Shown: positions 13,560-36,320 of the stretch, piece by piece | How the letters are laid out: each line of letters starts with the position of its first letter | Numbering within the stretch: position 1 is the stretch's first letter | Source: Octopus bimaculoides | Taxonomy: Eukaryota | Length of the DNA: 64,000 bases | Assembly: GCF_001194135.2 (NCBI RefSeq) | Contig: NC_068999.1 | Span: forward strand, 33,357,925 to 33,421,924 | Reading direction: 5' to 3' | Made by a program: the position numbers and the translations under genes | The notes under the pieces: model-generated | Databases searched by the model: none | What the model was told of the DNA's origin: nothing | What the model saw: the letters and a program-made list of their open reading frames with translations, nothing else

Positions 13560-13601
<42 letters not shown>

Positions 13602-16006: not shown

Positions 16007-16029
<23 letters not shown>

Positions 16030-16039
<10 letters not shown>

Positions 16040-17001: not shown

Positions 17002-17049
<48 letters not shown>

Positions 17050-17405
17050 GAATGTATATATAGCTTCTTAACCACGCAGCCATGCCTTCACCATTAAATT
17101 ATGGAAATATGTGGTAGCATGGATAATTAAACTTGTCACATATAAAGATATATTAGCTATAAAAATTTGTTCACAGTTTGAAGACTTGACAGATCATTCT
17201 ATAGTTTGAGAGATCATATTTCACTAAATCTCCCACACATTTAGTTATCTGAATTGCATGATTCCAACCATTAAAACGTAGTACATGTGGCTGATAACAA
17301 CATTCAATACATGAGATATGATACATTATCTGTCATATGTGCTTAAATCTTAGTCAGATTCTGTATTTAGAGCAGTCTGACCAACATTGACGGTAGGGAA
17401 TCACC

Positions 17406-17527
17406 CAGGGGCGTATATTCTGGGTATGTGCTGCACACCCATTGAAAATAGCAACTTTGTTATAAATACTAATCTTCCTCATTTCTTTAATCCCAAATCT
17501 TAATGGAAAACTTTTGTTATACGCCTG
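17406..17527. mobile_element. Small MITE (possible PIF/Harbinger-type ends)
   Basis: CAGGGGCGTATA ... TATACGCCTG inverted ends. Confidence 0.5.
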
Positions 17528-17913
17528 TTTGAAATTTGGTGGCGTTGGGTGTGGCAGCACACCCAATACAACAACCACCATATGCAACTGGATTCACCCT
17601 CCCTGTTTCTTGTTCATTTCTTCTCTCTCTTCCACCTTCATACCTTTCTTCCTTTTACTTGTTTCAGTCGTCTGCCAGAGGCCATGTTGGGGCACTGCCT
17701 TGAAGGATTTTAGTTGAACAAATCAACCCCAGGACTGTTTGTTTAAAGTCTAATACTTATTCTTTCAGTATATTTTGCTGAACCACTAAGCTATGGGAAC
17801 ATAAACACACCAATACCAGTCGTCAAGCAGTGGTTGGGGCCAAACACACACACACACACATACATATGTGATCTGAACGAAAAAGCACACTCTAAGATGC
17901 AGAGCAGTATAAA

Positions 17914-18133
17914 TTAAGATTGGGGAAGGCCGGTTTATAGGATTACATTAGGTTTCCTGTCCATAAAGGGTTTAGCTTTATGGTGTATTGTCAGATCTCA
18001 AAACCTGTTGGCCCATATTTTTAAGAAGTCTTGGGCCAACAGGTTTTTGGGATCTGACGATATGCCATAAAGCTAAACCCTTTATGGACGGGAGACCTAA
18101 GGTAATGCCATAAACTGGCCTTCCCAATTTTAA
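17914..18133. repeat. Fold-back element / MITE, ~105-bp arms
   Basis: gtccataaagggtttagctttatgg..tcagatctcaaaacctgttggccca versus tgggccaacaggtttttgggatctga..ccataaagctaaaccctttatggac, with a 16-nt loop. Confidence 0.9.
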
Positions 18134-18947
18134 TGTATATATGCGATGGGCTTCGTTAAGTTTCTGTCTATCAAATTCACTCAGAAGGCTTTAGTTGGCC
18201 AGAGGCTGTAGTAGAAGATACTTGCCCAAGGTGCCATGCGTGGGACTAAACCCAGAACCCTGTGATTAGTAAGCAAGGTTCTTACCACACAGCCATGCCT
18301 GCACCTATACTAGGACCCTTTCAAACCAAATTTCTCTGTCCCTATTTAATCACTCTCCATATTTCATTTTCACTCTATGTATCGAACTCCTCATCCACTG
18401 CTAACAATATTTTTGTTTTTCTCAACTCTGTTGAAGGCCAAGGACCTATAACTTTAGACTTTCTATGTTTCACATCAGTCAAAATTATCAACATTTCATC
18501 AACTCTCTTTTGTCTGTAAGCATATTTAATATTTCTCTGAAGAAACTCAATTTAATAGATGAGTGTTATCAGGAAATAGTCAGTCTATCAGGATTTCCAT
18601 TCATGTAAAAGTTTCTTCACATCTGCTCTACTTATCTAATGAACTGCGAATCATATGTAAAATATTTTCAGTTACAAAATGTTGCTTTTGATCTGAATGA
18701 GCTCTGGGATTAATCACACCATTCACCATTATCATGTGTGAATGTAGCTATGGTTGTGTACTTGAGAAATTGGTTTACAACTATACGCTCACAATACCAT
18801 TGTGATCTAATGTGGTAGTCTGAATGAGTGTCTTCTATCAGGGCTTCAAGTTGACTGATACCTTGTGATTGAAATTTCATAGATTACAGCTATGCAGAGG
18901 CATGTTGTGCAGTGTATGTGTGTGTGCGTGCATATATTTACTGGTAG

Positions 18948-19265
18948 CGAAGGTGTGTGGCTTAGTGGTTAAGGCATTTAGCTCATGATTGTAAGGTCAT
19001 CAGTTCGACTCCAGGCAGCAAGTTGTGTGTCCTTGAGCAAGACACTTTATTACACATTGCTCCAGTCCACTCAGCTGGCAAAAATGCGTTGTACCTGTAA
19101 TTCAGAGAGCCAGTCTTGTCACTTTCTGTATCACGCTGAATCTCCCTGGGAACTGTTAAGAGTATGCATGTCTGTGGAGTACTCAACCACCATTAATTTC
19201 ACAAGTAAGCTGTTCCAATGATTGGAGCAACTGGAACCCTATTCATCATAACCTACAGATTGCCA
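18948..19265 (+). mobile_element. tRNA-derived SINE, family C
   Basis: gtggcttagtggttaagg..agttcgactcc (A/B boxes), ccttgagcaagacact, cagtccactcagctgg core. Other copies near 28825, 54895 and 58940. Confidence 0.8.
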
Positions 19266-19590
19266 GTTTATTTACTGCTAATGAAGCCATTAGATAAATA
19301 AAGATTAATAAAATAAACAACATTAATAAAATAATAAAATTTCAAGCTTAAGGCTTGAAATTTGGGGGTAGGAGGCTAGTTGATTTTATTGACCCCAGTG
19401 CTCAACTGGTACTTATTTTATCAACCATGAAGGGGCAGAATTTGAGAATTTAGAAATCAATAAAGTAATACCAGACTGAAATAAATACTAAGGATTGATG
19501 TGATTAACAACACTTGATGCCAGTGCCTCAGCATGGCTGAGTATAATGGCTGAATCTAGTAGAAAAAGCAACAACTAAAGAATATATATA

Positions 19591-20785
19591 CAGGGTGCGA
19601 GGGGTATTTGAATAAACATTTGTGCAATTAGTCCTGATAATGATTTTTTAAGCAAATTATTCTATGAAACCGCCTTTGGCTTTGATGACTTCTTCAATGC
19701 GGGATCAAATCCGCTGGCATGCTGACACTATATGATCCTTATTCATTTCGGACATCACCTGGACAATGGCGGCCTTCAGTGAAGTTATGGTATTATGAGG
19801 ATGACGATTAGTCAACTTTTCAACAGTGCTCCACATGTAGTAGTCCATGGGGTTCAAATCTGACAAGTTTGGTGGCCACATATTGGGTGTTACATAATTG
19901 TAAGGATTGTCTGACAACCATTCTTGGATGACTAAGGCCTTGTGAGAAGGTGCTGAGTCTTGTTGAAACACGTATGGCTTTCCATTGGATACTTCCTTAA
20001 TCTGGAGTTTGATAACAGTTTCCAGTACCTCAATGTATCCAGCAGCATTAATTCTAAGACCCTGTGGAAAAAAGTGGGGAGGCATCACATGACCTTCACT
20101 ACTCACCACACTTAAAACCATCACAGTTGCTGGAAATTTCGTGTGCCTCACTCTGCACATCACCACTTGTCATTTCTTCTCTTAGACTTTTGATCCTGGT
20201 CAAAGTTTTTTCGTCAGAGAAAAACCAAAGCATGCCTTGTTCTTGAGGGTTTTTCACTTTGTTAAGTGACTGTTTTGAACAGATGAAATGGTTTTCCTGT
20301 GTCTTTGCAGACACGAATTGGCCTTTCCTCATTACATAGGACTTGTATTGAATGTCATGATGTACCACAGTTCTGATAGTACGCTCTGACATCCAGAGTT
20401 CTTTAGCAATGTACCTCATTGATCTTCTGGAGTATTCACCAATAATGTTCTGAACATGTCATATAAATTCCAGTGTCCTTTTAGTGTCTGAGCATTGTGA
20501 ATGATTTTTTTCTCTTTGATACAGATGAAACATTACCACCACATGCCTCCAATTCCAACCAAATTTTGTGTACAAATGATCTTGCAACATTTAGAAAGTT
20601 GCTAATTTCTAAATCACTGTGGTTTGCATGTATAGCAACTATTACTGCATGTCTTTTCATTTCTTGAGTTACCATGATCCATGATATTTTGAAAGGGTTA
20701 TCTGAAGAAAAAAAATGATACTTTAAATAATTTGAAGGTGTAATGAACTAAAAACAAAATGTCCTCAAATACCCCTCACATGCTG
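19591..20785 (-). mobile_element. Full-length IS630-Tc1-mariner DD37D (maT) transposon, frameshifted
   Basis: TA-flanked TIRs CAGGGTGCGAGGGGTATTTGA / TCAAATACCCCTCACATGCTG. Transposase in three pieces (20481-20675, 20099-20419, 19705-20166) with WFFSDEK, FQQDSAPSH and WPPNLSDLNPMD; 37 residues between the 2nd and 3rd Asp. Confidence 0.93.
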
Positions 20786-20799
20786 TATGTGTGTGTGTG

Positions 20800-20851
<52 letters not shown>

Positions 20852-20946
20852 NNNNNNNNNNNNNNNNNNNNNNNNNNNNNNNNNNNNNNNNNNNNNNNNN
20901 NNNNNNNNNNNNNNNNNNNNNNNNNNNNNNNNNNNNNNNNNNNNNN

Positions 20947-20993
<47 letters not shown>

Positions 20994-21258
20994 TGACAGA
21001 AAGAGAGAGGGAAGGAGAGGAAGGTTAACATTGGTCAGGATTGACTATGTATCTGCACGCAGAAAGTTTCTTGCTGAGATGCAGGTGTAGAGAAGTTGTT
21101 TTTTTTTTTAATGGAAAAGCCAACAATTGTCCAGGCACCAAATCTCTCTCCTTCATACTGTCCCACTCTCTCTTCTAAAATTTGAGTGGCCATGTAGCTA
21201 CTCTACAATATGAAAACTGTTCTACTCTGGCCTTTTCTCCTCTTTTCTCTTACTTTAA

Positions 21259-21478
21259 CCCTTTAGCAATTAAACTGGCCATATCCAGCCCAAATGTTCT
21301 ATCTGTTTTATGTTCAAACCAGCTAGATCCAGCCTCTCATATCTACCCTACAATGTCAATCTAACAATAAACTATCACATCATTGAAACGTTGAAGCTAC
21401 AAGATACTTCATGATTAATTCAAAACTATGTGAATTAACAAGCATTGCATTTGACAGATTAATATGAATGCTAAAGGT
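21259..21478. mobile_element. piggyBac-like MITE
   Basis: TTAA|CCCTTTAGCA ... TGCTAAAGGT|TTAA. Second copy at 53001-53220. Confidence 0.8.
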
Positions 21479-22022
21479 TTAATCCCCTATCTCTTAGCAC
21501 AAAGCTGCCTCTTTTGGGTTCATAGTCTTGTAAGGTGCATGGTGATCTCACCAGTGCTAGTGACGTAGAAAAAAACACCTAGTGCACACTGTGAAGTGGT
21601 TGGCATTAGGAAGGACATCCAGCGATAGGAATCAAGCCAAAAGTTGACAGTTGAACATGATTCAGTTCTTAGACCTGTCAGATCCTGTCAAACCATCAAA
21701 TCCATGCCAGTATGGAATATGGACATTTAATAATGGTGATGATGATGATAATGATGAAAATATGTATTAAGAGACAAAGAGAGTACCTGTATATGGTTAC
21801 TCTATCAGTTAAAAATAACAGTCAAATTTCGCAAATTTCTCCCTACTTTTTTTAAAAAAGAAAGATTAATTGGATAATGTTGTTAATAGATAATTTTTAA
21901 AAAATGGTATAGTCACAACTGGAACATCTTTGATCATGGATTGGCATGATCAAGGTTGACCTGGTGCTAAACAACACATTAGAGTAATTTTGTGATTATT
22001 CAGGGTTAAAAGGAACATTAAT

Positions 22023-22053
<31 letters not shown>

Positions 22054-22109
22054 CACTCATAAATTGAACCTCTACTCTGTTGTCTGTTGTTGATATTTCA
22101 TGTATTTGA

Positions 22110-22325
22110 TGGTGGTGAGCTGGTAGAATTGTTACAGCGCCTGGCAAAATGCTCAGCAGTATTTTGTCCATCTTCTGAGTTTAAATTCTGCCAAAGTCGA
22201 CTTTGCCTTTCATCCTTTCGTGGTCAGTGAAATAAGTACCCATTGAGCACTGGGGTTAATATAATCAACTTACCCCCCCCTCTCCCAAAATTGCTGGCCT
22301 TGTGCCAAAACTTGAAGCCAATATT
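22110..22325 (+). mobile_element. tRNA-derived SINE, family B
   Basis: ggtgagctggtagaattg..gagtttaaattctgcc head and gactttgcctttcatcctttcg..aataagtacc..cactgggg core. Copies near 24510, 26750, 38020, 42940, 47030(-), 56720(-) and 57500(-). Confidence 0.8.
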
Positions 22326-22446
22326 TCATGTCCCTTTAGACATTACTCTTCTATTCCCTTAGTGTTGCATATATTCCATTGCCATTCTAAGACACTTTTT
22401 TAAGAAGAACAGACATATCTACACTCTCCCTCCACTCACACATGTA

Positions 22447-22477
<31 letters not shown>

Positions 22478-23254
22478 GACATGCGACATACACACATACA
22501 TGCTTATATACATACACACAAATTATGACTATAATGCTGTCTCACATCTCTCTGTCAATTTGAACACCTACTCATTTTGTTCTTCCTACATTTAATTTAT
22601 TATTCCAATTGATTTATGATTGTAACAACCTCTGCCATTGAATTTTTCCTTTCATTCAAAACCCAGACAAATTAAACAAACCACATTTTATATATTTCTA
22701 CTGAACATTGGGCTATAAGCATCGTGTCTGTAATAATTTTCTTTAATTCAATGCTACCATCTTTTATCTTCTACTTGTTTCAGTCATGAGACTGCAGCCA
22801 TGCTGGGGCACTGCGTTGAAGAATTTTAGTTGAATAAATCAACCCCAGCGTTTTAGTTTTAAAAGCCTGGTACTTATTCTATCAGTCTCTTTTGCCTAAT
22901 GGCTAAATTACAGAGATGTAAACACATTGACACTAGTGGTGGTGGGGGACAAACAAAGACACACACATACATGCAGACACACATAGAGTGCGTTTGAAAA
23001 ATCCTCATGAATGGATGAAAGTGCTAAATGAATTACCCAAAATTCTGACTGCTTCCTTTTTCTTAATATATATATACATACATGCGTACAATAGATATAT
23101 ATATCGAGGTTATGAGAGGTATTGGTGTCAAGAAGACCCAAAGGTGTCAGGTAATGCTGAGTAAGTGCTATGGACAGACTATAGTTAACCTCCAGGTTTG
23201 ATAATGATACGAATGAGGAGCCTAACGTAGGTCGTGTATTAGCATGCACCTATA

Positions 23255-23660
23255 TAAAAATTAACAGAATGAGATAAAAATAATCCAAGGCTGTGAAAGA
23301 TTTAGGAACATTTATAAAGAAAAGTGGAGGAATGAAAACAGACATCTGTTTCCATTTCTATACTTCACTCTGTATTTCATATCTTCTCTATAATAACTAT
23401 TACTTAAACATTTTCTCGCACAGTCTCTGATGAAGGGATATATAAAACATCCTGGAAACAGCTGTAAGACCTTCTTCTCTTTATAAATGTTCTGAAAACT
23501 ATTCACAGCCTTGAATTTTNNNNNNNNNNNNNNNNNNNNNNNNNNNNNNNNNNNNNNNNNNNNNNNNNNNNNNNNNNNNNNNNNNNNNNNNNNNNNNNNN
23601 NNNNNNNNNNNNNNNNNNNNNNNNNNNNNNNNNNNNNNNNNNNTCATTCTGTTAATATAT
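23255..23660. mobile_element. Penelope-like terminal region with inverted partial repeat
   Basis: aattaacagaatga..ccaaggctgtgaaagatttaggaacatttataaaga (23260-23325) is the reverse complement of tctctttataaatgttctgaaaactattcacagccttg..tcattctgttaat (23471-23656, spans a gap). Encloses a hammerhead motif. Confidence 0.65.
23423..23470 (+). ncRNA. Minimal type I hammerhead ribozyme motif
   Basis: GTCT-CTGATGA-AGGGAT atataaaac ATCCTG-GAAA-C AGCT G-TA-AGAC. Stem I GTCT/AGAC, intact core, palindromic CAGCTG stem III, GUA cleavage triplet. Confidence 0.8.
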
Positions 23661-24509
23661 ATATATATATTTATATATATATTTATATAAATATATATAC
23701 ATACATACATACATACACACATACATATATACAATAGGCTTCTTTTCAGTTTCTCTCTACCAATTCCACTCAAGGCTTTGGTCAGTTTGAGGCCATATTA
23801 GAAGACACTTGCCCAATGTGTCTGAACCCAGAGCCATGTGGTTGGAAAGGAAGCTTCTGACCACACAGCCACACCTGCGCCTGCTATCATTATCACCATT
23901 TAAAATACTCAAACATTTAAAAATTATGTGCTACTGGTTTTTCCCCAAACTGTTTGCTTACTTGATTGCTTATGTCTCTCTCTCTCTCTATCTAACATGC
24001 TATCTCACAAACTACTGAAGCTTGCAAGTGTTTGCTTGATTGCTTGCATATACATCTGACAAACTACAGCAAGGAAGAAGGTTCAATTTTATATCAACAA
24101 TTGCTAAACGAAATTAAATTGAGAATTTTCATTTTGGCTTTTTGAAATTTTTTAATTTTTTATTTCAAACAAGTTTTCTTGATATTACAGAAATGGTTGA
24201 GCTCTATTCGGCATGTCTTTTTATTAGATAAGCTATGAGTTTATGAACAATGAAATCAGTTATTTGATAAAGGAGATGCAATAGAAATACTTTCCACACA
24301 CATAGAGGAATATAGCTAGAAAATTCCTTTCATGTTTTAGTAGTTGAGAAGTTAGTATTGGTGGTTATAAAAGTTAGTCTTGTAATTTATTGTAGGTTTA
24401 TAGTATTAATGGTTATAGCAGTTAATATTGGTGGTTGTGGTTGTTAGGATTGAGGACTCTAGCAAGCATTGGCAGTGGTTATGATATTGAACATTAGGGC
24501 TATAGTAGG

Positions 24510-25010
24510 GTGGTGAGCTAGTAGAGGTGCTATTTCACCAGGTAAAATGCTTAGTGCATTTTGTCCGTCTTCATGTTCTGCCTTCAAATTCCATTGAGGT
24601 CACCTTTGTACTTCATCTTTTTGGAATTGATAAAATTAGTGCCAGTTGAACATTGGGGCTGATGTAATTGACTTACTCTCTCCCCTAAAATTGATGGCCT
24701 TGAGCCAAAATTTGAAAGTGGATTTGGTAGATGGAACCTGAAAAATGCCTGTCGTGTGTGTGTGTCTTTGTGTCTGTGTTTGTCCTCCACCACTACTTGA
24801 CATCCAGTGTTGGTTTGTTTACATCCTCATTATTTAGTGATTTTGGCAAAAGTGACTGATAGAAGTAGCAGGCTTAAAAAAAAAATGTCCAACTAAAAAT
24901 TCTTCAAGGCAGTGTCCCAGCATGGCCACAGTCTAATTATTGAAACAAGAAAAACATAAAACATCTGTGGTGCTCCAGCATGGCCACAGTCAAATGACTG
25001 AAACAAGAAT
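24510..25010 (+). mobile_element. SINE B fused to the 3' part of SINE A, with duplicated tail
   Basis: ccttgagccaaaatttgaa joins directly to agtggatttggtagatgg. The tail ccagcatggccacagtc occurs twice (~24920 and ~24980). Confidence 0.7.
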
Positions 25011-25758
25011 AAAAAAAAGCAAGAGAAAAAACAGGACTATATCATGATGCATGAAGCATACATAATGCATCTGAACACACACACACCACATATTTATACA
25101 GACTAATAACAGTTTTGGATTTGCCATGTTGCTAATAGAAAAAACAGTTAAATAAAAAAAATGATGTTTCCATTATTTGATTCAACCCCAGTAGGTAAGT
25201 TTTGTCTGAAAAGGGTTGGGGAGTTCAACACAACAAATTAAGGATTTTAAGTGTCCTCACTATGAACTGTACATTGTATTGTGGATTCTGTCTTGTCATA
25301 GTATGACTCAGTGAATTAGGGCAACTTCTTGGCATGTGACAGTATGAAGCCATTACCCTGTATTCTAGGCCAGTTATAAAAGTTGTAATATAGTTTTATC
25401 TGGCAGTATTTCATCTGCCGTTATGTTATGAGTTCAAATTCTGCCGAAGTCGATTAAAAAAAGTTGATGTAATTGACTTAATCCCCTTATCTGTCCTTGT
25501 TTGTCCTCTCTATGTTTAGCCCCCTGTGGGCTATAAAAGAAATATAGTTTTATCTTCAGAAACAATTTTGTACACACACAGAAAAAGATACACACATACA
25601 TGTATGCAGAATTTGTAAATTGCTTATTTTCACTTCAGCAGAAAGACACAAGTTTATTTATAGGTCTAATAGATGAGAATTTGTGATATTCATGCCTTTT
25701 TCAAAATCATTATTGATGTAAGTGAAGGAAGTTTTCAGCCAAACAGCCCCTTTGCCCT

Positions 25759-25994
25759 GACTACATTGTCACAAAATCTCTGTTGCTACGACTACATTGT
25801 TGCAAAATCTCTGTCACTATGACTGCACAGTAGCAAAATCTCTGTTGCTATGACTACATTGTAGCAAAATCTCTGTTACTATGGCTAAATTGTAATAAAA
25901 TCTCTGTTGCTCTGAGTACACTGTAGCAAAATCTCTGTTATCATGACTACACTGTAGCAAAACTTCTATTGCTATGACTACATTGTTGTAAAAT
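25759..25994. repeat. 31-bp minisatellite, ~7.5 units
   Basis: Consensus gcaaaatctctgttgctatgactacattgta. Confidence 0.9.
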
Positions 25995-26352
25995 TCCGAT
26001 TTCTACAAATACTCTTTACAAGAACTTACTCTGCTGTCATTGTACCCTTCTACTCAACCAAATCTTGAAATGTCAGGAATTATGCAAGGAATTCTAACTT
26101 TAGTCTGTTTCTGTGAGGAGTTAATCCAGAATCTTTTCATTACACTTTAGCAATACATTGACTTTGTTATTGTTTGTTTTTGTTCATAATTTGCCTTCTT
26201 GAAATGTCAGCTTGGCACAAGAATTATTCTTCAAGAGTTCTACAAGTGCAAAAACCCCATATTTTATAGAATCTCAAGTCTTTTGGTGTTTTACTGACAT
26301 TTCAACCTTTTTAATAATAAATGTTGAATGTCCTGGAGACTATCAGATGTGA

Positions 26353-26386
<34 letters not shown>

Positions 26387-26935
26387 ATATGTGATGGTAT
26401 GGTGAGAGTAATTAAGTGGTGTGTAGTACTACTAGTAGTAATAGTGTTGGTTGTGGTAGTGTGTGGTAGTTGTGTTCTATTCTTGTTGACACTTGTTAAA
26501 GTAGACATCATTTCTGAATATTCTTGTTGGTGTTGTAGTACCAATATTATGAAGATAGTGGTGTCTTGTGACTATTGTTGTTCCTGAGGTTCCAGTATAT
26601 TTTGTGGTATCTACAGAGATTGGGGTGTCTTTATGACCATTGTTGTTGAGGCTGTAGGGTATTTGCTGCCTTACCTTAGAAAATTTTTTATTATTTCATT
26701 GTTGTTTTTGTTGTTGTTGATATTCTTCTTCTTCTTCTTCTTCTTCTTCTTAAGGCAGTGAGATGGTAGAATTGCTAACATGCCGGGCCGGGTGGAATGT
26801 TTAGTGATATTTCATCCGTCTTTATGTTCTAAGTTCAAATTCTGCCAGTTGATAAAATAAGTACCAGTGAAACACTGGGGTCAATGTAATTTTGGGTCTT
26901 ATGCCCTTAGTAGAAAGGACTATTATTATTATTGA

Positions 26936-27128
26936 TTGAAAGAGCAGTGCATGCCATCAAAGTGATACTGGGGTAAAATATATGAAGCCCAGTATACCCA
27001 TAATGACTCCTCATCTGATAGGGGTATATCAGGCACATGCATCACAACCATATGTGCGCAACATGGTAATCTCATATCAAGGTAAACAGAGCATGACCTT
27101 GCAGGTGGGTCCCAGTTAGAATTTTCTT
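26936..27128 (-). mobile_element. TAA-associated repeat family X, 5'-truncated
   Basis: Reverse complement of 49480-49631 (aaaattctaactggg..gatgggtata..ttttaccccagt..gcactgctct), ending in an (ATT)n run. Confidence 0.8.
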
Positions 27129-27143
27129 ACCCTAACCCTAACC

Positions 27144-27760
27144 TCTTTCTCTACTTGCTCTCTTCATGTTTAGATGATCCTTTAGTTCATCCTCTGTCTA
27201 CTTCAGAATTCCAGTGCCTTGTTGAACCACTGCAACTGTACCATGAATTTATTGCCAAAATTATGTTTCTGGCATTCAACTTTGAATTCAGTATTTTTCT
27301 CAGTCACCACAAATGCTCTTTTGTTGTCTTTTCTTTCATATCTTTATGTTTAATAGCCTCTGCCTCAAGTATTCCCAGGTATTTATATCTAGATTCAAGT
27401 TCAATTGCCTTCATCATTTCATCACTTGACATACATATACTTTCTGTTCCGGCAAACTTTCCTCATCTCATCACCATCACAACACATTTTGAAAGTCTAA
27501 ACTCCATCTTGATATCATTTGAGAAAATATGCACAGAGTGGACTAGACTCTCCAGTTCTGTCTCACGTTTTGTGAACAACTTCAAATCAACCATAAATAA
27601 CAGGTGATTAAGCTTTCCATTGCCACTTCTCAGATCATACCCCAAATCTGTCTTCAGCAGTATTTCACTCAAAAGAATCATTCCCAGTACAAAGATTAGT
27701 GGGGATACATTGTTCCTCCAGAAGATTCCTCTCCTGCTGTTAATTCAGTTCTCTTTCTGC
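27144..27760 (-). mobile_element. Dong/R4-clade LINE RT fragment
   Basis: GKLNHLLFMVDLKLF..MEFRLSKC, then YKYLG-like (tataaatacctgggaata on the minus strand). Confidence 0.8.
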
Positions 27761-28244
27761 TACTCCATACATTTCCATAGTAGTAGTAGTAGTAGAAGCA
27801 ACAGCAGTAGTAGGTGTAAAGACTGTGAATTGACTATTGCTGTAGAATACAAAACCAATTGTTTTCAGGGCAATAATTGATATAACGAACTATATTACTC
27901 TGCTACAAAAGCAAGCTTTGTGTCTGAGTAATAAATTATTAAAAATTCATTAACAAAAATAATTAAAGTTAATTTGTTGTAATGCAAGAGCAACCCAATA
28001 GTTTGGATGATTGTGTGTTTTCAGATAGAATCATGAATTTTGAGGTGAATGCTTAGATTGCTCAGAAGCAGAGTTTTGATGCCACAAACAACTGTTATTC
28101 TTATTGGATTCTTGATCTTTCTTTAAGAAATTATTAGAACAGTTGTTGTTGATGATATTACATACATACTTATGTGTGTTTTGGTGATGATGGCTAAGAC
28201 GCACATGCACACGCACACAGACACACATGCACTTTAGGTTAATT

Positions 28245-28553
28245 AAAATATGTTTGTAACATATTTTAACTTCAAAAGGCAAATTCACTGCAGTTACCAT
28301 GGAAAAAAGTTCTCATTCATGGTAAAAGGTGTAAAAACTGTTCAGTGTCTCTCACTTGTTGACTCCTAGATGCATTTCAAGTTCTTTAGCCTTCCTCAGT
28401 AGGAGATACTGAAGAGAGACAACCTTCGGTGAGTCCATTAGTGGAAGACACTGAGCAGATAAGGTGTTTTACACCTTTCGCCGTAAGCAAGAATTTTTTG
28501 GTAACTGCTGTGAGTTTGCCTTTAAAAGTTCAAATATGTCATAAGCATATTTT
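28245..28553. mobile_element. Fold-back MITE immediately upstream of a FAIM-like exon
   Basis: aaaatatg..catattttaacttcaaaaggcaaattcactgcagttacc..aaaggtgtaaaa..cagtgtct versus agacactg..ttttacaccttt..ggtaactgctgtgagtttgcctttaaaagttcaaatatg..catatttt. Confidence 0.8.
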
Positions 28554-28647
28554 GACTAAAGTTTCTTTATTCCTCATCGCTGCTTACTGCTGATACTACT
28601 GCTTATATATATACATATAATTTAAACTTATTTGTTTCTTTTTCCAG

Positions 28648-28760
28648 CAAAAAATCTTCTTCCTTGCTCATCGAAGGGGATCAGTATATCCCTGAACAGC
28701 GATCCTGGGTCAGGTTATGGACTGTTAATTTAGATAATATTTTTTATTATATTAAATACC
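28648..28760 (+). CDS. FAIM: FAIM-like gene, internal coding exon (xKKSSSLLIEGDQYIPEQRSWVRLWTVNLDNIFYYIKY)
   Basis: Polypyrimidine tract tttgtttctttttccAG acceptor and C|GTGAGT donor. 113 nt, open in one frame (phase 2 in, phase 1 out). Aligns by eye with the FAIM linker and start of the C-terminal domain (human recalled as YTLEING..EDRSKTTNTWVLHMDGENFRIVL). Confidence 0.78.
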
Positions 28761-28824
28761 GTGAGTATGATCCTTTAACTACCTCTGTTAAGTTGTTTTC
28801 ATTATCATGTATATATTTCTTCTC

Positions 28825-29145
28825 CATGAAGGCATGTGGTTAAGCATTTAGAGCATTTGGCTCACAATCGTAAGGTCATAATTTTAATTCCCAATGGCAC
28901 ATTGTATCTTTGAGCAAGACACTGTATTTCTCATTGCTTCTGTCTACCCAGCTGGCAAAAATGAGTTGTACTTGTAGTTCAAAAGCCCAGCCTTGTCACA
29001 TTCTGTGTCATGCTGAATCTCTCTGAGAACTACATTAATGTTTGTGGAATGCTCAGCCACTTGCACATTAATTTCATCAGCAGGTTGTTCGGTTGATTGG
29101 ATCAACTAGAACACTCATTATCATAACTGATGAAGTGCCAGTTCT
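28825..29145 (+). mobile_element. SINE family C in a FAIM-like intron
   Basis: Same head, core and tail as 18948-19265. Confidence 0.75.
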
Positions 29146-30830
29146 AAAAGTTCTATTTCTTCTCTGTTACATGTCCACTATGTTTTGTTCTGTTTAATAT
29201 TTAATATATCATAACTATCCATTAGATCCTATTAAAAACTGGGTAGAGCATGACACTAAATAATTGACCATCATTAGTTATCCTATTGTAGTATCTCTGC
29301 TGTTATGTGTTTGTGACAAGCAGGCCAGACTACCTCACTCTCAGTTGATTGTCAGCCTAACATTGTTGTACATTTTATCACCTGACTGAAGCTGACTAAT
29401 GTAAATTAAATGGAATTGTAAATGAATCTGACTGAAATATACACAACAGATTATCATCAAGCATTATGACAAAGCACATATAAAAAATGTCCCAATGCAA
29501 ACAACATAATGAACAATGAAGCAAAGATTTTCACAACACAAATATTGAAGGTTGTGTAGAATGCTCCACTCTGGCAAAAACCTACATAACATTCAAAGTT
29601 CATAAGGAAAACTTTATATCCTATTCAAAATGCAAGTTCTTTAATCTTATGAAAAATGAACTGAAATAAACTTAGTTGTTATTGATTAACTGCAGATTGA
29701 ATAGATCTATGATCAAAGACACTCTAGATGTGACCATCTCACCTTATTTTCAGGTGTTAGTGTATCTAGGACTAAAAGTTAAATGTATCTTTCTCTTCAT
29801 TAACAAGGTAGAATGTGATTTGAGGGAGATTTGGTTGCCATTTTTTGAAGATTCAGTTACTTAGATGGTAACCAAACCTACATCATGGACTCAGTCTGTT
29901 GCTAAGTTCTTGTTTGAAAGATTGAATGAAGAAAAGAGGAATGATTGATGGAATGGAAGAATGAATTAATAAATGAATGAATAGAAAGAGGAATGGCTGA
30001 ATGAAGAAATGAACAAATAGAGGAATGAATGAATGGATGGAAAAATGAACGAATAATGGAATAGATGAATAAGCATATCCGTGCTTTGTATAAAACCAAA
30101 ATAGAGTTATTCACTTTCACCTTCTCACCCAGCTCTACCACTTGTCTGTTGTGTCTCACAGACTATCAGAACTATTGTTACTGTAAAGGTTGTTATTTGA
30201 TTTACTGTAGATCAATGAAGGAAACAGAAAAGTGGTATAATTCCAGTGAATTGCTCTGATGTTAATAATACCCAGTACAATATTCTGTTTTGTACCAAAT
30301 TCCACATTAATAAGCACTGCCAAAGTGGCTTTCAAAAACAACTAGTACAGTGCTAAGTTCTTTATCAAATCTACATTAATATACATTGTGAATATTTCAT
30401 TCCTTAATAAACAATGTTGTTTCACAGAAGTATTGTTGCATAGAAACTTAGCAGACATGTCTATAAGGATTTACTTGAATGATGCATATAGATTTATTGG
30501 ACATCTCTTTCGGGGTTTAGTGAATGGGTGTATAGGAAATTAGGATACAGTTCTATAGAGACAGAGCGACACTTCTGTAGGAACAGAGTGTTATCTGTTG
30601 AGTGTGAAGTCTATCTGGCTTATATGTTTGTCTGAGTGGTAGGCAATAAGGTGGATGGCCAATTTCCTGAATTTAGTGCTAAAAATGGGTATATATTTGG
30701 ATTTACAAATAAGAGAAAAGAATACTTAATCTAAATAGAAAAGTTTGCTCATTTGTTTGATGGTGCAGCTTCCCTCCACAGTGTCACTCTGAGTTTTGTG
30801 TTGTCTCTTCTTACAGAATCTTACTACTGT

Positions 30831-32645
30831 ATCATCATCATCATCGTTTAACGTCCGCTTTCCATGCTAGCATGGGTTGGACGACTTGACTGAGGACTGG
30901 TGAAACCGGATGGCAACACCAGGCTCCAATCTAAATTTGGCAGAGTTTCTACAGCTGGATGCCCTTCCAAACGCCAACCACTCAGAGAGTGTAGTAGGTG
31001 CTTTTACGTGTCACCTGCACGAAGGCCAGTCAGGCGATACTGGCAACGGCCACGCTCGAAATGGTGTCTTTTATGTGCCNNNNNNNNNNNNNNNNNNNNN
31101 NNNNNNNNNNNNNNNNNNNNNNNNNNNNNNNNNNNNNNNNNNNNNNNNNNNNNNNNNNNNNNNNNNNNNNNNNNNNNNNNNNNNNNNNNNNNNNNNNNNN
31201 NNNNNNNNNNNNNNNNNNNNNNNNNNNNNNNNNNNNNNNNNNNNNNNNNNNNNNNNNNNNNNNNNNNNNNNNNNNNNNNNNNNNNNNNNNNNNNNNNNNN
31301 NNNNNNNNNNNNNNNNNNNNNNNNNNNNNNNNNNNNNNNNNNNNNNNNNNNNNNNNNNNNNNNNNNNNNNNNNNNNNNNNNNNNNNNNNNNNNNNNNNNN
31401 NNNNNNNNNNNNNNNNNNNNNNNNNNNNNNNNNNNNNNNNNNNNNNNNNNNNNNNNNNNNNNNNNNNNNNNNNNNNNNNNNNNNNNNNNNNNNNNNNNNN
31501 NNNNNNNNNNNNNNNNNNNNNNNNNNNNNNNNNNNNNNNNNNNNNNNNNNNNNNNNNNNNNNNNNNNNNNNNNNNNNNNNNNNNNNNNNNNNNNNNNNNN
31601 NNNNNNNNNNNNNNNNNNNNNNNNNNNNNNNNNNNNNNNNNNNNNNNNNNNTGGCTTCATTCCTTGCGAGCTTACGTATGTCCTCAGCAGTTACAGCCCA
31701 TGTTTCACTGCCATGTAGCATGGCTGTTCGTACACATGTGTCATACAGTCTGCCTTTTACTCTGAGTGAGAGTCCCTTTGTCGCCAGCAGGAGTAAGAGC
31801 TCTCTAAACTTTGCCCAGGCTATTCTTATTCTAGCAGCTACACTTTCAGTGCACCCACCCCCACTACTAACTTGGTCGCCCAGATAGCGGAAGCTATCGA
31901 CTACCTCTAGTTTTTCACCCTGGAATGAGATAGAAGTTGTTTCCTGTTTGTTTACAGTCTTTGTTGCACCTGAACATCTGCCACAAACAAAGACTAACTT
32001 CCTAGTTAACTTGCATTTGATGTTGCTGCACCTCTTATGTGTCCATAGCTTGCACCGGGTACATCTTATAGAGTTACTACATACTCCTTTTCTACATACT
32101 GAGCAGGGCCATCTACCTGAAGGGGTTTGTGTTTTATCTACCTTCCTACTTATTAGGATTTTGGTTTTAGCTAGGTTGACTCTAAGGCCCNNNNNNNNNN
32201 NNNNNNNNNNNNNNNNNNNNNNNNNNNNNNNNNNNNNNNNNNNNNNNNNNNNNNNNNNNNNNNNNNNNNNNNNNNNNNNNNNNNNNNNNNNNNNNNNNNN
32301 NNNNNNNNNNNNNNNNNNNNNNNNNNNNNNNNNNNNNNNNNNNNNNNGTGGACCCCCTACCTCTACCCGGAATTCATTGCTGTACTCATTTCCAACCCTC
32401 ACCTTACTGGCAGCATCTCTGTACATGGCTCGCACAGCTCTCACTAACCATTCTTCTATCCCAAGTTTCCTCATTGACCACCAGATAAGGGATCGGGGGA
32501 CCCTGTCAAAGGCTTTCTCCATGTCAACGAAAGCCAGGTACAGAGGTTTATCCTTGGCTAGGTATTTCTCCTGCAGCTGTCTTACTAGAAATAAGGCATC
32601 AGTAGTGCTTTTACCTGGCACGAACCCAAACTGCATCTCATCTAA
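30831..32645 (-). mobile_element. RTE-clade LINE, 5'-truncated, antisense in a FAIM-like intron
   Basis: QFGFVPGKSTTDA..AFVDMEKAFDRVPR, GLRVNLAKTK, FRYLGD, RIRIAWAKFREL..KGRLY..CVRTAMLHGSETW, with no stops in the sequenced segments. Family D 3' tail at 30831-31079. Confidence 0.93.
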
Positions 32646-32766
32646 ATTGTATATATTTACAAATATCCAAATACGTACATTCTAGTCTTAGTTATCTTAG
32701 CTTGCACAAATATATATAAAATGGTTAAAGAGAACTGATTTATAATTCCAGTAATTTCCATTTCAG

Positions 32767-32816
32767 ATTATGGCACTGGCTCAGTAAATTGTAATGGAGA
32801 TTTCCTTAAAACAATT
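32767..32816 (+). CDS. FAIM: FAIM-like gene, 50-nt coding exon (HYGTGSVNCNGDFLKTI)
   Basis: tttccatttcAG acceptor and ATT|GTAAGT donor. Phase 1 in and phase 0 out, matching both neighbouring exons. VxCNGxxLxT matches FAIM VWCNGKKLET. Confidence 0.85.
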
Positions 32817-33095
32817 GTAAGTGTTTGAAAATTCTTTTATTAATACCATCGTAACTTGTTGACCTTTAAAACTGAAGTTTCACAATCATTAAATGTTAAA
32901 ATATTATATTGCGTAACACATTAGATATTTGAAAAATGTTGATTATTACAAAGGAAGCCATAGTTGTGTAATTGAGAAGGTTGTTTCCCAATCTGTGGTC
33001 TTAGGTTCAGTTCCATTGCATGGCAGCTTGAGTAAGTGTCTTCCACTATAGCCCTTGTGAGTGTATTTGGTAGATGGAAACTGGAAGAAGCTTGT

Positions 33096-33132
<37 letters not shown>

Positions 33133-33135
<3 letters not shown>

Positions 33136-33540
33136 CGCAGGTGTGGCTGTGCGCTAAGAAGCTTATTTCCCAACCACATGGTTCCAGATTCAGTGCCATT
33201 GTATGGCACTATAATCTCGAGCTGAGCAAAGCCTTGTGAGTGGATTTGGTCGATGGAAACTGAAAGAAGCCCGTCAAATATATATATATATATATGTATG
33301 TATGTATATATATTTATGTGTGTGTGTATCTTTGTGTTTGTATTTGTCTCTCCCCACCATCACTTGACAACCAATGTGTGGTATGTTTTTGTCCCCATAA
33401 CTTAGCAGTTTGGCAAAAGAGACTGATAGAATAAGTACTAGGCTTACAAAGAATAAATCCTTGGATCGATTTCTTCTACTAAAACCCTTTAAGGTGGTGC
33501 TCTAGTATGACTGCAGTGAAATGACTAAACCATGTAAACG
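33133..33540 (+). mobile_element. SINE family A, flanked by partial copies at ~32960-33100 and ~33590-33775
   Basis: Full head, core and tail; clustered copies lie in the last intron of the FAIM-like gene. Confidence 0.8.
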
Positions 33541-34696
33541 AATATATATATATATATATATATATATGCATGTATATATGTATGCATTTGGGTTTGAGTC
33601 TGTCCCCCACCACTGCTTGACAAACAGTGTTGGTTCGTCAATGTTCATAACTTAGCGCTTTGACAAAAAGGACTGATAGAATAAGTACTAGGTCTCAAAA
33701 AATAATACTGGGGTCAATTTGTTTGACTAAACCCTGCAGGGCTTAGTCCAATGACTAAAATAAGTAAAAGATAAAAGTGTTAACGTTTTAGAGGTTAAAA
33801 TAAACATACAAATCATTACATGCTTACATTACTAGGTGATGATGATTCTGGTGGTGGTGGTGGTGGTGGTGATGAATATGATAGTGATAATTGTGATGAT
33901 AGTGATGATGATAGCAATGAAAATGGTTGTAGTGCTAAGGGTGATCATTAACAAGATGATTAACCTTCAGAAAAATACCTTGTCGTATCCTGTTACATTT
34001 GTATGAAAACGAATAAAGAAGTCTGTTGTGATTTTTTATAAACAAAATTTTATTCTTTTTGTACACAAAATCAACAAATATTGTTGTGACTAAGAATGAC
34101 AAAATGTCGAGAGAGTTTGAATGTTCTTGTTCTTGGTGTAATTGTAGTAGTAATTAAAAAGTTAGCTGCTGGTCATTGTGTTGCTGTTGTTGAACATGCA
34201 TTCTGGTTGTTGTCAACTTGGGTCAACAACTATCCACATTTGTTTGCCATCTGTCTGCCATCTCATCTCTATCAGCTCTCAATGCTCTCTCAAAGCTCTC
34301 TATCAAGTAGTCAAGGTGTGCCTAATTTATACTGATGGTAAGGTTCAGAAAGCAGCATGCCAAAAGATGAAATTGTCCACACAAAGACAACATTGTAAGA
34401 AACCATTATTATTATGATTTTTTAATCCTGCGCTACATGATGGGGAAGGTTATGACAATATTGTTGGTAGTGATGGTGGTGGTAGTGGTGGTGGTGGTGA
34501 TAATGATGTTTCTGGTGGTGGTGTTAGTGATAAATATGACTGTGATAATGTTGGTGACGGTTGTAGTGATTATAGTGATGATGATGATGACGATGATAAT
34601 GATGACGATGATAATGATGATGTGGATAAGTTTGACGGTGGTGATGACAACAGTAATGGTGCTTTAATTAATTGTTCTATTTTATCTAAATTTCAG

Positions 34697-34837
34697 AGTG
34701 GCTTCAGCAAGGAAGGACCTCAGACCATCTTTCTTATTGGCACCCATGAGGCCTGTATACAGACAGTAACCAATGGTGTTAACAAGTATGGCTGCGTTCA
34801 CACTCTCAAAGTCAATGGAGAGATTGTACCAGAATAG
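34697..34837 (+). CDS. FAIM: FAIM-like gene, terminal coding exon (SGFSKEGPQTIFLIGTHEACIQTVTNGVNKYGCVHTLKVNGEIVPE*)
   Basis: aatttcAG acceptor, phase 0, ends in TAG. Ungapped match to the FAIM C-terminus as recalled (GEFVDDGTETHFSIGNHDCYIKAVSSGKRKEGIIHTLIVDNREIPE), terminating at an equivalent position. Confidence 0.88.
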   Translation, partial: SGFSKEGPQTIFLIGTHEACIQTVTNGVNKYGCVHTLKVNGEIVPE

Positions 34838-36320
34838 AACAGGTGCTGTTCTTACTGCCTCTCTCTTGGAGAGAGAGAAAGTGAGAGCAGTGAGAAGGAA
34901 GGGTAGAAATGAAAATATTGCGAATGAAGGATGGGGAAGTAGACAAAGCAAAAGAAAAGACAGGGGGGAGTGGGGGGAGAGAGATATAAAAAAAAGAAGA
35001 GAATAACTAGAAAAGAGGAGCCTAAAAGAGACAGTGATAGAGAAAGAAGAATTAGACAAAAATTAAGTTAAGCATGAGTGAGTGAGAGAGACAATGAGTG
35101 AATGAAAGAGTGACAGAGAAAGCCTGAGAAAAAGTAAAACTGAAATGGTTAGAAAGATATGTGAGAGAGGGAATGATCAACAGATAGACCAGTAGGTAGA
35201 TAGACAAATGAACATGTGTATAGATGAATAGATAGACAGATGTAAAACCTGAAGCTGTCATTTGGAAGCTAGTTTTAAGAGTAACAATGGGAACATTTAG
35301 TGACTGGTAGGACTCAGTATTGAAAGTAGAATCAAATTTATAATATATGTCATGTTGATTGGGACTTCCAAGTTTTGCCTAAGGATTTATTCAATCAGAG
35401 GTTGAGCAAGCCATCAGGCAAGACTTAAAGTCTGACAGTGTGCAACAGAAAGACTGATAGGTACATAGATATTTAGTTACGTGTATAGATAAAGAGACAA
35501 ATTCTTAATAAAACCAAAAAAACAGATAAACAAATTGTATGNNNNNNNNNNNNNNNNNNNNNNNNNNNNNNNNNNNNNNNNNNNNNNNNNNNNNNNNNNN
35601 NNNNNNNNNNNNNNNNNNNNNNNNNNNNNNNNNNNNNNNNNNNNNNNNNNNNNNNNNNNNNNNNNNNNNNNNNNNNNNNNNNNNNNNNNNNNNNNNNNNN
35701 NNNNNNNNNNNNNNNNNNNNNNNNNNNNNNNNNNNNNNNNNNNNNNNNNNNNNNNNNNNNNNNNNNNNNNNNNNNNNNNNNNNNNNNNNNNNNNNNNNNN
35801 NNNNNNNNNNNNNNNNNNNNNNNNNNNNNNNNNNNNNNNNNNNNNNNNNNNNNNNNNNNNNNNNNNNNNNNNNNNNNNNNNNNNNNNNNNNNTATATATA
35901 TATATATATATATATGTGCATGTGTTACATATTTCGAATTGTGTTTGTGTGAGTCAGTACTTAGTGTCTCAATTTCGGTTTCCAGGAGACTCAGTAGCAA
36001 CTCACACATTCAGTTCTGAATGAATATTATTATTCTGCTCTATCTAACTATTTTTCTAATTTCTTTGCTAAATTTCATTTTGCACCAGTATGAGACCTCC
36101 ATTTACTTATATATGCAGATACACACACACATAATATATATATATGTAAGCATGTATATATACGCATTTGTGTGTATGTGTATGCATATGCACACATACA
36201 TACACACATGCTCACACACAAACACAAACACACACAGGGCCTGAAATGTTGCCAGTGACAAACCTTGAAAGATACAGACAACTTTACATATAATTTGAAT
36301 GTTAGTTCTGTGAAACTCTG

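What the first reader, a model, noticed from the sequence alone, without database searches (positions are those of the whole stretch)
28648..34837. Divergent FAIM-like gene invisible to the ORF track
Seen: three exons (113, 50 and 141 nt; introns 4006 and 1880 bp) with canonical GT-AG and matching phases. The last 77 aa align without gaps to human FAIM as recalled from memory, about one-third identical (W, VxCNG, GxxTxFxIGxH, GxxKxGxxHTLxV, PE). FAIM is an anti-apoptotic, anti-aggregation all-beta protein that is usually well conserved. This divergence and the loss of the VWCNG tryptophan suggest a fast-evolving paralog or lineage-specific duplicate (inference).
Basis: partly seen in the sequence, partly recalled or inferred. 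Interest (0 to 1): 0.75.

Follow-up and report, generated by a model that had tools for sequence, protein, structure and literature searches.

The report
Octopus half-FAIM gene, constant 3' exons
The three small exons are real and encode the single beta-sandwich domain of an octopus gene already annotated as "FAIM1-like", which belongs to an old, mollusc-wide, undescribed subfamily of FAIM that lacks the N-terminal domain.

Summary
Exons 28648-28760, 32767-32816 and 34697-34837 (+) have AG/GT flanks and join in frame to 100 codons plus a stop. The product hits Pfam FAIM1 (49.6 bits, cut-off 22) over the C-terminal half only. Its predicted structure matches the human FAIM C-terminal domain (TM 0.82).

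Both N gaps lie in intron 1, inside a retrotransposon insertion that the gap-free O. sinensis ortholog lacks. No coding sequence is affected.

The gene is not new. It is 100% identical to RefSeq Octopus bimaculoides LOC106870491, "fas apoptotic inhibitory molecule 1-like", with at least 34 isoforms.

The window holds only the constant 3' end of a gene of about 130 kb. Upstream of the window lie a basic leader exon (MSVVLTAFRNSK...) and seven alternative 24-nt cassette microexons.

The same leader-plus-C-terminal-domain architecture and exon structure occur in a chiton, bivalves, gastropods and other cephalopods. It is therefore an ancient molluscan lineage, not a cephalopod-specific duplicate. 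It is under purifying selection (dN/dS about 0.05 between Octopus species).

I could not determine whether Octopus also keeps a canonical two-domain FAIM. Function is inferred only.

The parts
28648..28760 (+). First constant exon (113 nt). Its first base C completes the codon begun in whichever upstream exon is spliced to it. It encodes KKSSSLLIEGDQYIPEQRSWVRLWTVNLDNIFYYIKY plus the first base of His, that is, the linker and roughly the first two strands of the FAIM-type beta-sandwich.
   Evidence: AG acceptor and GT donor. 100% match to RefSeq isoforms. Orthologous exons in O. sinensis L002 85409-85521 and Argonauta L001 21691-21803.
28761..32766 (+). Intron 1 (phase 1, inside the His codon). 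It contains both N gaps.
   Evidence: The same intron position and phase occur in the canonical FAIM genes of Branchiostoma and Ptychodera.
30831..32648 (-). Retrotransposon fragment inserted in intron 1. It includes a minus-strand ORF at 31071-32636 with an RVT_1 reverse-transcriptase domain. Both assembly gaps (31080-31651, 32191-32347) lie inside it.
   Evidence: ORF list. Pfam RVT_1, 33.9 bits. The segment is absent from the collinear O. sinensis intron.
32767..32816 (+). Second constant exon (50 nt): (H)YGTGSVNCNGDFLKTI. It carries the NG turn motif. Asn replaces the canonical Trp.
   Evidence: A 50-nt exon with phase-1 entry and phase-0 exit is present in all short-form genes examined and in the canonical FAIM of amphioxus and a hemichordate.
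32817..34696 (+). Intron 2 (phase 0).
   Evidence: It is partly collinear with O. sinensis.
34697..34837 (+). Last coding exon (141 nt including the TAG stop): SGFSKEGPQTIFLIGTHEACIQTVTNGVNKYGCVHTLKVNGEIVPE*. These are the last strands of the sandwich. The protein ends at the subfamily-typical VPE.
34838..35541 (+). Probable 3' UTR. It is 87-90% identical and collinear with O. sinensis, and a poly(A)-signal-like hexamer lies near 35507. The transcript end was not verified.
1..28647 (+). Distal part of the long intron between the cassette-microexon array (upstream of the window) and the first constant exon. It is collinear with O. sinensis L002 from about 61.5 to 85.4 kb and holds transposon remnants.
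3965..3988 (+). Cassette-like 24-nt element (cag|ATCTCTTGAAAGCCCAAAATCGAA|gtaagaac, reading SLESPKS). It has an intact polypyrimidine tract, AG and GT, and is the last copy of the tandem microexon repeat. It is in none of the isoforms read here, so it is either a rarely used cassette or a decaying one.
   Evidence: Approximate-match scans. The ortholog in O. sinensis is L002 63767-63790 (SLESQKS). It differs at 2 of 24 positions, about the same as the surrounding intron.

Best explanation
What it is. The finding is the constant 3' end (three exons, 100 codons) of Octopus bimaculoides LOC106870491, a gene of about 130 kb. Its products consist of three parts:
- a strongly basic 29-residue leader, MSVVLTAFRNSKTAKAKKEQLKKKKTKDR, with net charge +9;
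- zero to seven alternatively included 8-residue cassettes, each encoded by a 24-nt microexon (YAARQQL, QPKFYEE, SVESQQL, YVESQQL, FVESEQL, SVESEEL, SDESPQL);
- one FAIM-type eight-stranded beta-sandwich, equivalent to the C-terminal domain of canonical FAIM. There is no FAIM N-terminal domain.

Shown:
- the identity of the gene, its fold and its exon structure;
- membership of a mollusc-wide 'short FAIM-like' clade with a conserved leader;
- origin from a canonical FAIM gene at the DNA level, because both introns inside the domain are shared in position and phase;
- purifying selection;
- a tandemly duplicated cassette array in the O. sinensis ortholog. The O. bimaculoides array was inferred from protein isoforms only.

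Inferred mechanism (my estimate: about 25-30% for the specifics). The beta-sandwich is the client- or partner-binding module, as in FAIM, which binds receptors, XIAP and misfolded or ubiquitinated proteins. Without an N-terminal domain, and with the inter-domain contact Arg110 replaced, it cannot work through the NTD-CTD interaction that FAIM's anti-apoptotic activity requires. Instead it is positioned by the conserved hydrophobic-plus-polybasic leader, which would bind an acidic surface. That surface is most likely the inner membrane leaflet; nucleic acid or the nucleus is the alternative. In Octopus, the acidic and Gln-rich cassettes (0 to -2 charge each) set the length and net charge of the spacer between leader and domain. 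This would grade how far the domain reaches, or how strongly the leader binds.

The confidence of 0.8 refers to the identity, architecture and evolutionary placement, not to the inferred mechanism.
For: Gene identity and fold:
- Exons and frame.
- Pfam FAIM1, 49.6 bits, C-terminal half only.
- Ungapped match to the PDB FAIM C-terminal domains.
- AlphaFold model with pLDDT 86.7 and eight strands.
- Foldseek best hits 2KW1 (TM 0.82) and 2KD2 (TM 0.75), with the next hit at E = 0.39.
- 100% identity to RefSeq isoforms. X1 is XP_052830745.1 (185 aa), and isoform names run up to X34.
- Gene range 129.6 kb.

The short-form family:
- Short-form homologs in Liolophura, Solemya, Tegillarca, Potamilus, Littorina, Biomphalaria, Physella and Argonauta share the leader MSV[IV]L.A[CF][RK].S.
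- They share the same exon structure.
- The 50-nt exon and both intron phases are also found in canonical FAIM of Branchiostoma and Ptychodera.
- The short-versus-canonical split has 200/200 neighbour-joining bootstraps.
- dN/dS is 0.05.
- An intron-less Logan contig from another cephalopod (SRR24189503) encodes the leader joined directly to the domain, which indicates spliced mRNA.

Cassettes and charge:
- The O. sinensis locus has ten cassette exons about 2 kb apart. For six of them the 300-nt flanks are 73-85% identical to each other; the other four are 48-68%.
- The leader and cassettes get low confidence (pLDDT about 50) in the full-length model, consistent with a flexible region.
- Charge counts.
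- FAIM domain biology, including the role of E38, R110 and N123: review PMC6628066. All short forms have Y, S or G at the Arg110 position and keep Asn123 (alignment).
Against: - No experiment or expression data for this gene was available. The function rests on homology at about 33% identity to a domain whose own mechanism is unclear.
- The leader matches no Pfam family, and its helix is predicted with low confidence. Membrane versus nuclear targeting is a guess.
- Cys8, a possible lipidation site in other molluscs, is Phe in the octopods.
- The isoform multiplicity comes from RefSeq models built on short reads over near-identical 24-nt exons, so it may be inflated by ambiguous mapping.
- The leader and annotated cassette exons are outside the window. 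For O. bimaculoides I inferred them from proteins, not from DNA.
Confidence: 0.8

Rival explanations
1. It is the only FAIM gene of Octopus, and perhaps of molluscs: a fast-evolving ortholog of canonical FAIM that lost its N-terminal domain, not a paralog.
For: No canonical molluscan FAIM appeared in any search. However, the short-form searches may miss canonical proteins because of the query's divergence, and one search listed only 120 of 1018 hits. tblastn with canonical FAIMs found no second FAIM exon in the window or in the flanks of the Argonauta, O. sinensis, Littorina and Liolophura loci. No second PF06905 gene was called in the 10-kb flanks of the Solemya and Physella loci.
Against: Aplysia californica is reported to have two FAIM-domain genes (PMC9334734). 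The chiton Liolophura has a second PF06905 gene (126 aa) 10 kb downstream of its short-form gene. Canonical two-domain FAIM is retained at about 60% identity in other spiralians, the rotifers. The short forms make a cleanly separate clade.
Confidence: 0.2
2. It is a cephalopod-specific, recently duplicated and rapidly diverging FAIM copy.
For: Identity to human FAIM is low (about 33%) and the canonical Trp is lost.
Against: The same architecture, leader motif, C-terminal VPE stop and exon structure occur in a chiton, bivalves and gastropods. The Trp is missing across the subfamily. dN/dS is 0.05 within Octopus.
Confidence: 0.03
3. It is a decaying gene fragment or an annotation artefact, that is, a non-functional relic of a FAIM C-terminal half.
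For: There is no start codon in the window. The intron is full of transposons. The gene models are computational.
Against: The frame is open and the splice sites are intact in four cephalopods. There are 10 synonymous against 2 non-synonymous changes. The family is conserved across Mollusca. An mRNA-type contig exists in a relative. The fold is predicted with confidence.
Confidence: 0.02

Closest known systems
Canonical FAIM1 (FAIM-S/FAIM-L; Pfam PF06905; C-terminal-domain structures PDB 2KW1 and 2KD2)
   Same: It has the same eight-stranded beta-sandwich as the FAIM C-terminal domain (TM 0.82) and about 33% identity without gaps. Core residues are conserved: the Trp of strand 1, the DT..V.xNG turn, F..G.H, and G..H.L..G..PE. 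Both introns within the domain are identical in position and phase, including the 50-nt exon.
   Different: It has no N-terminal domain, so Pfam profile positions 1-81 are unmatched. The inter-domain contact residue Arg110 and the Trp of VWCNG are replaced. A conserved basic leader stands in place of the N-terminal domain. The protein stops right after PE. Divergence is much faster than in canonical FAIM, which is about 60% identical between rotifer and mammal.
Predicted 'FAIM1-like' or hypothetical short proteins of other molluscs (Liolophura sinensis XP_064614790.1, Littorina saxatilis, Solemya velum KAL5005332.1, Tegillarca, Potamilus, Biomphalaria, Physella, Argonauta hians)
   Same: They share the leader MSV[IV]L.A[CF][RK].S followed by a polybasic stretch, a short linker, one FAIM C-terminal domain ending in VPE (or VPD), and four coding exons with the same phases.
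   Different: Only the three Octopus species show the tandem array of 24-nt cassette microexons and dozens of isoforms. Argonauta has no cassette-like sequence in the corresponding intron. Octopods have Phe instead of Cys at leader position 8. None of these proteins has been studied, and literature searches found nothing.
Combinatorially spliced mini-exon regions, such as the acidic N-terminal variable region of fast skeletal troponin T or the variable exons of CD44 (from general knowledge, not tested here)
   Same: This is an analogy for the part of the gene upstream of the window. Several tiny in-phase cassette exons are included in many combinations, which changes the length and charge of a flexible segment next to a constant domain.
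   Different: The proteins are unrelated. Here the cassettes are young tandem duplicates (24 nt each; 27 nt for the first O. sinensis cassette) with 73-85% identical flanks among six of them. Their combinatorial use rests on RefSeq models only.

Membership tests
FAIM1 family (Pfam PF06905) | Match to the family HMM above the curated gathering score | tested here: met
   49.6 bits against a cut-off of 22, E = 5e-13, for the window-encoded 100 aa. The full isoform X1 scores 47.6 bits.
FAIM1 family (Pfam PF06905) | C-terminal domain fold: eight antiparallel strands in two sheets | tested here: met
   The AlphaFold2 model has pLDDT 86.7 and eight strands. Foldseek gives 2KW1 TM 0.82 with rmsd 2.1 A and 2KD2 TM 0.75, with no other hit below E = 0.39.
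FAIM1 family (Pfam PF06905) | Two-domain architecture: N-terminal domain plus C-terminal domain, about 180 aa | tested here: not met
   The HMM match covers profile positions 82-171 only. All isoforms consist of leader, cassettes and C-terminal domain. tblastn with canonical FAIMs finds no N-terminal-domain exon in the window or in L001/L002.
FAIM1 family (Pfam PF06905) | Inter-domain contact residues of the C-terminal domain (human Arg110, Asn123) needed for anti-apoptotic activity (PMC6628066) | tested here: not met
   The Arg110 position is Tyr in Octopus and Y, S or G in all short forms. Asn123 is kept (alignments; review read).
FAIM1 family (Pfam PF06905) | Shared gene structure within the C-terminal domain | tested here: met
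   The phase-1 intron lies in the codon aligned to amphioxus Glu116. The exon is 50 nt, and a phase-0 intron precedes GEFVDDG/SGFSKEG. This holds for Branchiostoma, Ptychodera, the chiton, Littorina, Argonauta and Octopus.
FAIM1 family (Pfam PF06905) | Anti-apoptotic or anti-aggregation activity | not testable with these tools
   This needs cell or in-vitro assays.
Molluscan short FAIM-like subfamily (defined here) | Conserved N-terminal leader MSV[IV]L.A[CF][RK].S followed by a polybasic stretch | tested here: met
   It is present in all O. bimaculoides RefSeq isoforms that contain the window's exons. The leader exon itself lies outside the window.
Molluscan short FAIM-like subfamily (defined here) | Four-coding-exon plan: leader of 80-86 nt; then 113-125, 50 and about 140 nt (141 nt including the stop codon in the cephalopods); product ending in VPE | tested here: met
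   Window exons are 113/50/141 nt. Argonauta has the same sizes. Liolophura and Littorina have 80, 122-125, 50 and about 140 nt (that script cut their last exon 3 nt before the stop).
Molluscan short FAIM-like subfamily (defined here) | Groups with the short forms, apart from canonical FAIM, in a tree of the domain | tested here: met
   The neighbour-joining (BLOSUM62) split has 200/200 bootstraps on 86 columns. No canonical molluscan sequence was available to include.

The most novel reading that the evidence does not exclude
In the genus Octopus, an ancient single-domain FAIM relative acquired a tandem array of duplicated 24-nt microexons. Seven are annotated in O. bimaculoides and ten in O. 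sinensis, and one further intact-looking copy lies in this window at 3965-3988. These are spliced combinatorially into dozens of isoforms. The result would be a graded series of spacer lengths and charges between a conserved basic targeting leader and the beta-sandwich. This would be a lineage-specific way of diversifying a stress or apoptosis adaptor. More broadly, the mollusc-wide short FAIM subfamily would be a functionally distinct, N-terminal-domain-independent branch of FAIM biology that nobody has described.
Probability: 0.4. Interest if true: 0.6.

Novelty: new variant of a known kind. Interest (0 to 1): 0.38.

Why it matters
FAIM is a conserved but mechanistically obscure protein, reported to counter apoptosis and protein aggregation. 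Its activity is thought to need contact between its two domains. A naturally occurring branch that keeps only the C-terminal domain, is conserved and is under selection would help separate two things: what that domain does on its own, and what the N-terminal domain adds. This branch has been retained since the common ancestor of the sampled molluscan classes and has its own conserved leader.

The Octopus-specific microexon array, if its combinatorial use is confirmed, would be a compact example of new isoform diversity arising by tandem duplication of tiny exons in cephalopods.

For the genome scan itself the result is mostly reassuring.

Tried and rejected
1. I looked for the leader and the annotated cassette exons in the window by six-frame regular expressions and by tblastn. 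They are absent. They lie upstream of the window, which starts roughly 1 kb past the position of the last O. sinensis cassette.

2. An attempt to fetch the O. bimaculoides locus DNA failed because the gene range of 129.6 kb is too long. I used the O. sinensis ortholog instead.

3. I searched for a canonical two-domain FAIM of Octopus with a canonical-FAIM profile. It gave 1018 hits, but only the top 120 are listed; the named ones are deuterostomes or rotifers.

4. I looked for a second FAIM gene next to the short-form gene. tblastn found none in the window, Argonauta, O. sinensis or Littorina sequences, and no second PF06905 gene is called in the Physella or Solemya flanks. Only the chiton has one, and just its last 17 codons were readable.

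5. There is no synteny between the genes downstream of the Physella locus (an ATG3-like and a KDM6-like gene) and the window.

6. Pfam scans of the leader and of the cassette region found nothing above threshold.

7. Literature searches for FAIM in cephalopods or molluscs found only the Aplysia immunome gene count.

8. dN/dS against Argonauta could not be computed because synonymous sites are saturated.
Full report
**Observation.** They measure 113, 50 and 141 nt. Each is preceded by a polypyrimidine tract and AG, and the first two are followed by GT. Joined, they read in one frame. The first base completes a codon from an upstream exon, and 100 codons then run to a TAG at 34835-34837.

The peptide scores 49.6 bits against Pfam FAIM1 (cut-off 22, E = 5e-13), but only over profile positions 82-171 of 172, the C-terminal half. 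It aligns without gaps to the solved FAIM C-terminal domains 2KW1 and 2KD2 (E about 3e-10). This is far beyond chance.

**Assembly gaps.** Both N runs lie in intron 1. They sit inside window 30831-32648, which carries a minus-strand ORF (31071-32636) with a reverse-transcriptase domain (RVT_1). In the gap-free O. sinensis ortholog the flanks of this segment abut at L002 87610-87613. That intron is 2.2 kb long and contains no extra exon. The gaps are therefore inside a species-specific retrotransposon insertion and do not bear on coding continuity. Only the stated intron length (4006 bp) is uncertain.

**The gene is already annotated, and the window holds only its 3' end.** The peptide is 100% identical to many RefSeq proteins of Octopus bimaculoides named 'fas apoptotic inhibitory molecule 1-like'. 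It is 98% identical to those of O. vulgaris and O. sinensis, and 68% identical to Argonauta hians. The gene is LOC106870491. Its longest product, X1 (XP_052830745.1), has 185 aa, isoform names reach X34, and the gene range is 129.6 kb.

All isoforms share three features:
- a 29-residue leader, MSVVLTAFRNSKTAKAKKEQLKKKKTKDR;
- a variable subset, always in the same order, of 8-residue cassettes (YAARQQL, QPKFYEE, SVESQQL, YVESQQL, FVESEQL, SVESEEL, SDESPQL);
- the 100 residues encoded in the window.

Neither the leader nor any annotated cassette is in the window. The window is collinear with O. sinensis from just downstream of that species' last cassette onward.

**The cassette array, read in the O. 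sinensis locus (L002).**
- The leader exon is followed by a 35-kb intron.
- Ten microexons follow, about 2 kb apart on average. Nine are 24 nt and the first is 27 nt.
- All enter in phase 2 and leave two bases into a codon, so the junction residue (R, S or Q) depends on the next exon.
- For six of the ten cassettes the 300-nt flanks are 73-85% identical to each other, which indicates tandem duplication. The other four are 48-68% identical.
- A 25-kb intron then leads to the constant exons.

Argonauta has the leader and the three constant exons (113/50/141 nt) but no cassette-like sequence. One further cassette-like copy lies in the window at 3965-3988, with an intact AG and GT. It has an ortholog in O. 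sinensis and is in none of the isoforms read here.

**Family.** A phmmer scan of 1.84 billion representatives found only 14 hits. The best hits outside the cephalopods were 131-aa proteins of a bivalve (Solemya) and a chiton (Liolophura), with the same architecture. A profile search added Tegillarca, Potamilus, Littorina, Biomphalaria, Physella and several unnamed transcript-derived proteins.

All of them start with MSV[IV]L.A[CF][RK].S followed by a polybasic stretch. All have one FAIM C-terminal domain and end at VPE (VPD in the two planorboid snails). The leader is better conserved than the domain. The four-coding-exon plan and the intron phases are the same in the chiton, Littorina, Argonauta and Octopus.

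The canonical FAIM genes of amphioxus and a hemichordate have the same 50-nt exon, with a phase-1 intron at the aligned codon and a phase-0 intron before GEFVDDG. The short form therefore arose from a FAIM gene by genomic duplication or remodelling, not by retroposition. In a neighbour-joining tree of the domain, short forms and canonical FAIMs separate in 200 of 200 bootstraps.

So is Arg110, one of the residues reported to mediate the NTD-CTD contact needed for FAIM's anti-apoptotic activity. Asn123 is kept (PMC6628066).

**Is it functional?**
- Between O. bimaculoides and O. sinensis the 300 coding nucleotides differ at 10 synonymous and 2 non-synonymous sites, giving dN/dS of about 0.05.
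- An intron-less 1.4-kb contig assembled from a public run (SRR24189503) encodes a 131-aa cephalopod ortholog, with the leader joined directly to the domain. This indicates spliced mRNA.
- AlphaFold2 predicts the domain with high confidence (pLDDT 86.7, eight strands). Foldseek returns only the two FAIM C-terminal-domain structures as significant matches, with TM 0.82 and 0.75.
- In the full-length model the leader and cassettes have pLDDT of about 50, so they are probably flexible.

**Mechanism (inference).** The domain is likely the binding module, by analogy with FAIM. Lacking the N-terminal domain and the contact arginine, it cannot use FAIM's inter-domain mechanism.

The leader is conserved and hydrophobic at its tip. 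It carries a net charge of +9 and, outside the octopods, a Cys at position 8. It looks like a targeting element for an acidic surface: membrane first, nucleus or nucleic acid second.

The Octopus cassettes carry 0 to -2 charge each. They sum to -5 in O. bimaculoides and -12 in O. sinensis. They would set spacer length and offset the leader's charge. None of this has been tested.

**What remains open.** I could not determine whether Octopus also has a canonical two-domain FAIM. The profile search listed only the top 120 of 1018 hits, and none is molluscan; the named ones are deuterostomes or rotifers. Indirect evidence favours paralogy in molluscs. Aplysia is reported to have two FAIM-domain genes (PMC9334734). 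The chiton has a second PF06905 gene 10 kb from its short-form gene.

No paper on this subfamily, or on FAIM in cephalopods, was found.

**Verdict.** The gene model already exists in RefSeq. Interest is moderate. It comes from the undescribed subfamily and from the Octopus microexon array, most of which lies outside the window.

Noticed in passing
window 3965-3988 (+); a degenerate partner copy at about 3876-3899: This is a 24-nt cassette-like microexon (SLESPKS) with an intact polypyrimidine tract, AG and GT. It is the last unit of the tandem repeat that carries the gene's alternative cassettes. An ortholog sits at O. sinensis L002 63767-63790. It is in none of the isoforms read here, and its divergence between the two species equals the intron background.
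   Followed up: partly
L002 (O. sinensis) 37.8-63.8 kb: Most repeat units (eight of the eleven, counting the last, unannotated one) hold a doublet. The used cassette (...aaacag|ATCT...GAG|gtaagaa) is paired with a second copy about 85-90 nt upstream. That copy has 'attacg' or a similar sequence instead of an AG acceptor and is apparently unspliced. O. bimaculoides cassette peptides (SVESQQL and the like) resemble this upstream copy type.
   Followed up: no
L003 (Liolophura sinensis) 34295-34348, minus strand: A second gene with a FAIM1 (PF06905) hit and a 126-aa product lies tail-to-tail 10 kb downstream of the chiton short-form gene. Only its last 17 codons (...LYMDDDIVAQHQFSEKN*) are in the fetched locus, so its type is unknown.
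   Followed up: partly
window 30831-32648 (-): A non-LTR-type retrotransposon fragment (RVT_1, plus a weak PHD-like Cys-rich stretch) is inserted in intron 1. It is present in O. bimaculoides and absent at the orthologous site in O. sinensis. Both assembly gaps fall inside it.
   Followed up: yes
window 19705-20419 (-); 50951-51580 (-); 47295-47855 (+): Other transposon remnants are present. There is a DDE_3 transposase-like ORF (just below the Pfam cut-off), a second RVT_1 fragment, and an ORF with no Pfam match. No other cellular gene was detected in the window.
   Followed up: partly
P0074 (Tegillarca granosa, 173 aa): This gene model contains two leader-like segments in tandem (MSVIFGAYHRMAKKKEIESKLKKKAQQQK... 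and then MSVILTACRHSKQKAVEKALKKRAEKQK...). That suggests a duplicated leader exon or a mis-joined model.
   Followed up: no
window-wide, next to most N gaps (e.g. 2892-3572, 35473-36023, 38335-39149, 41024-41877): The assembly gaps are flanked by TA/CA-type microsatellites, which produce long spurious 'YIYIYI' and 'CVCVCV' ORFs. They should be disregarded in any ORF track.
   Followed up: no
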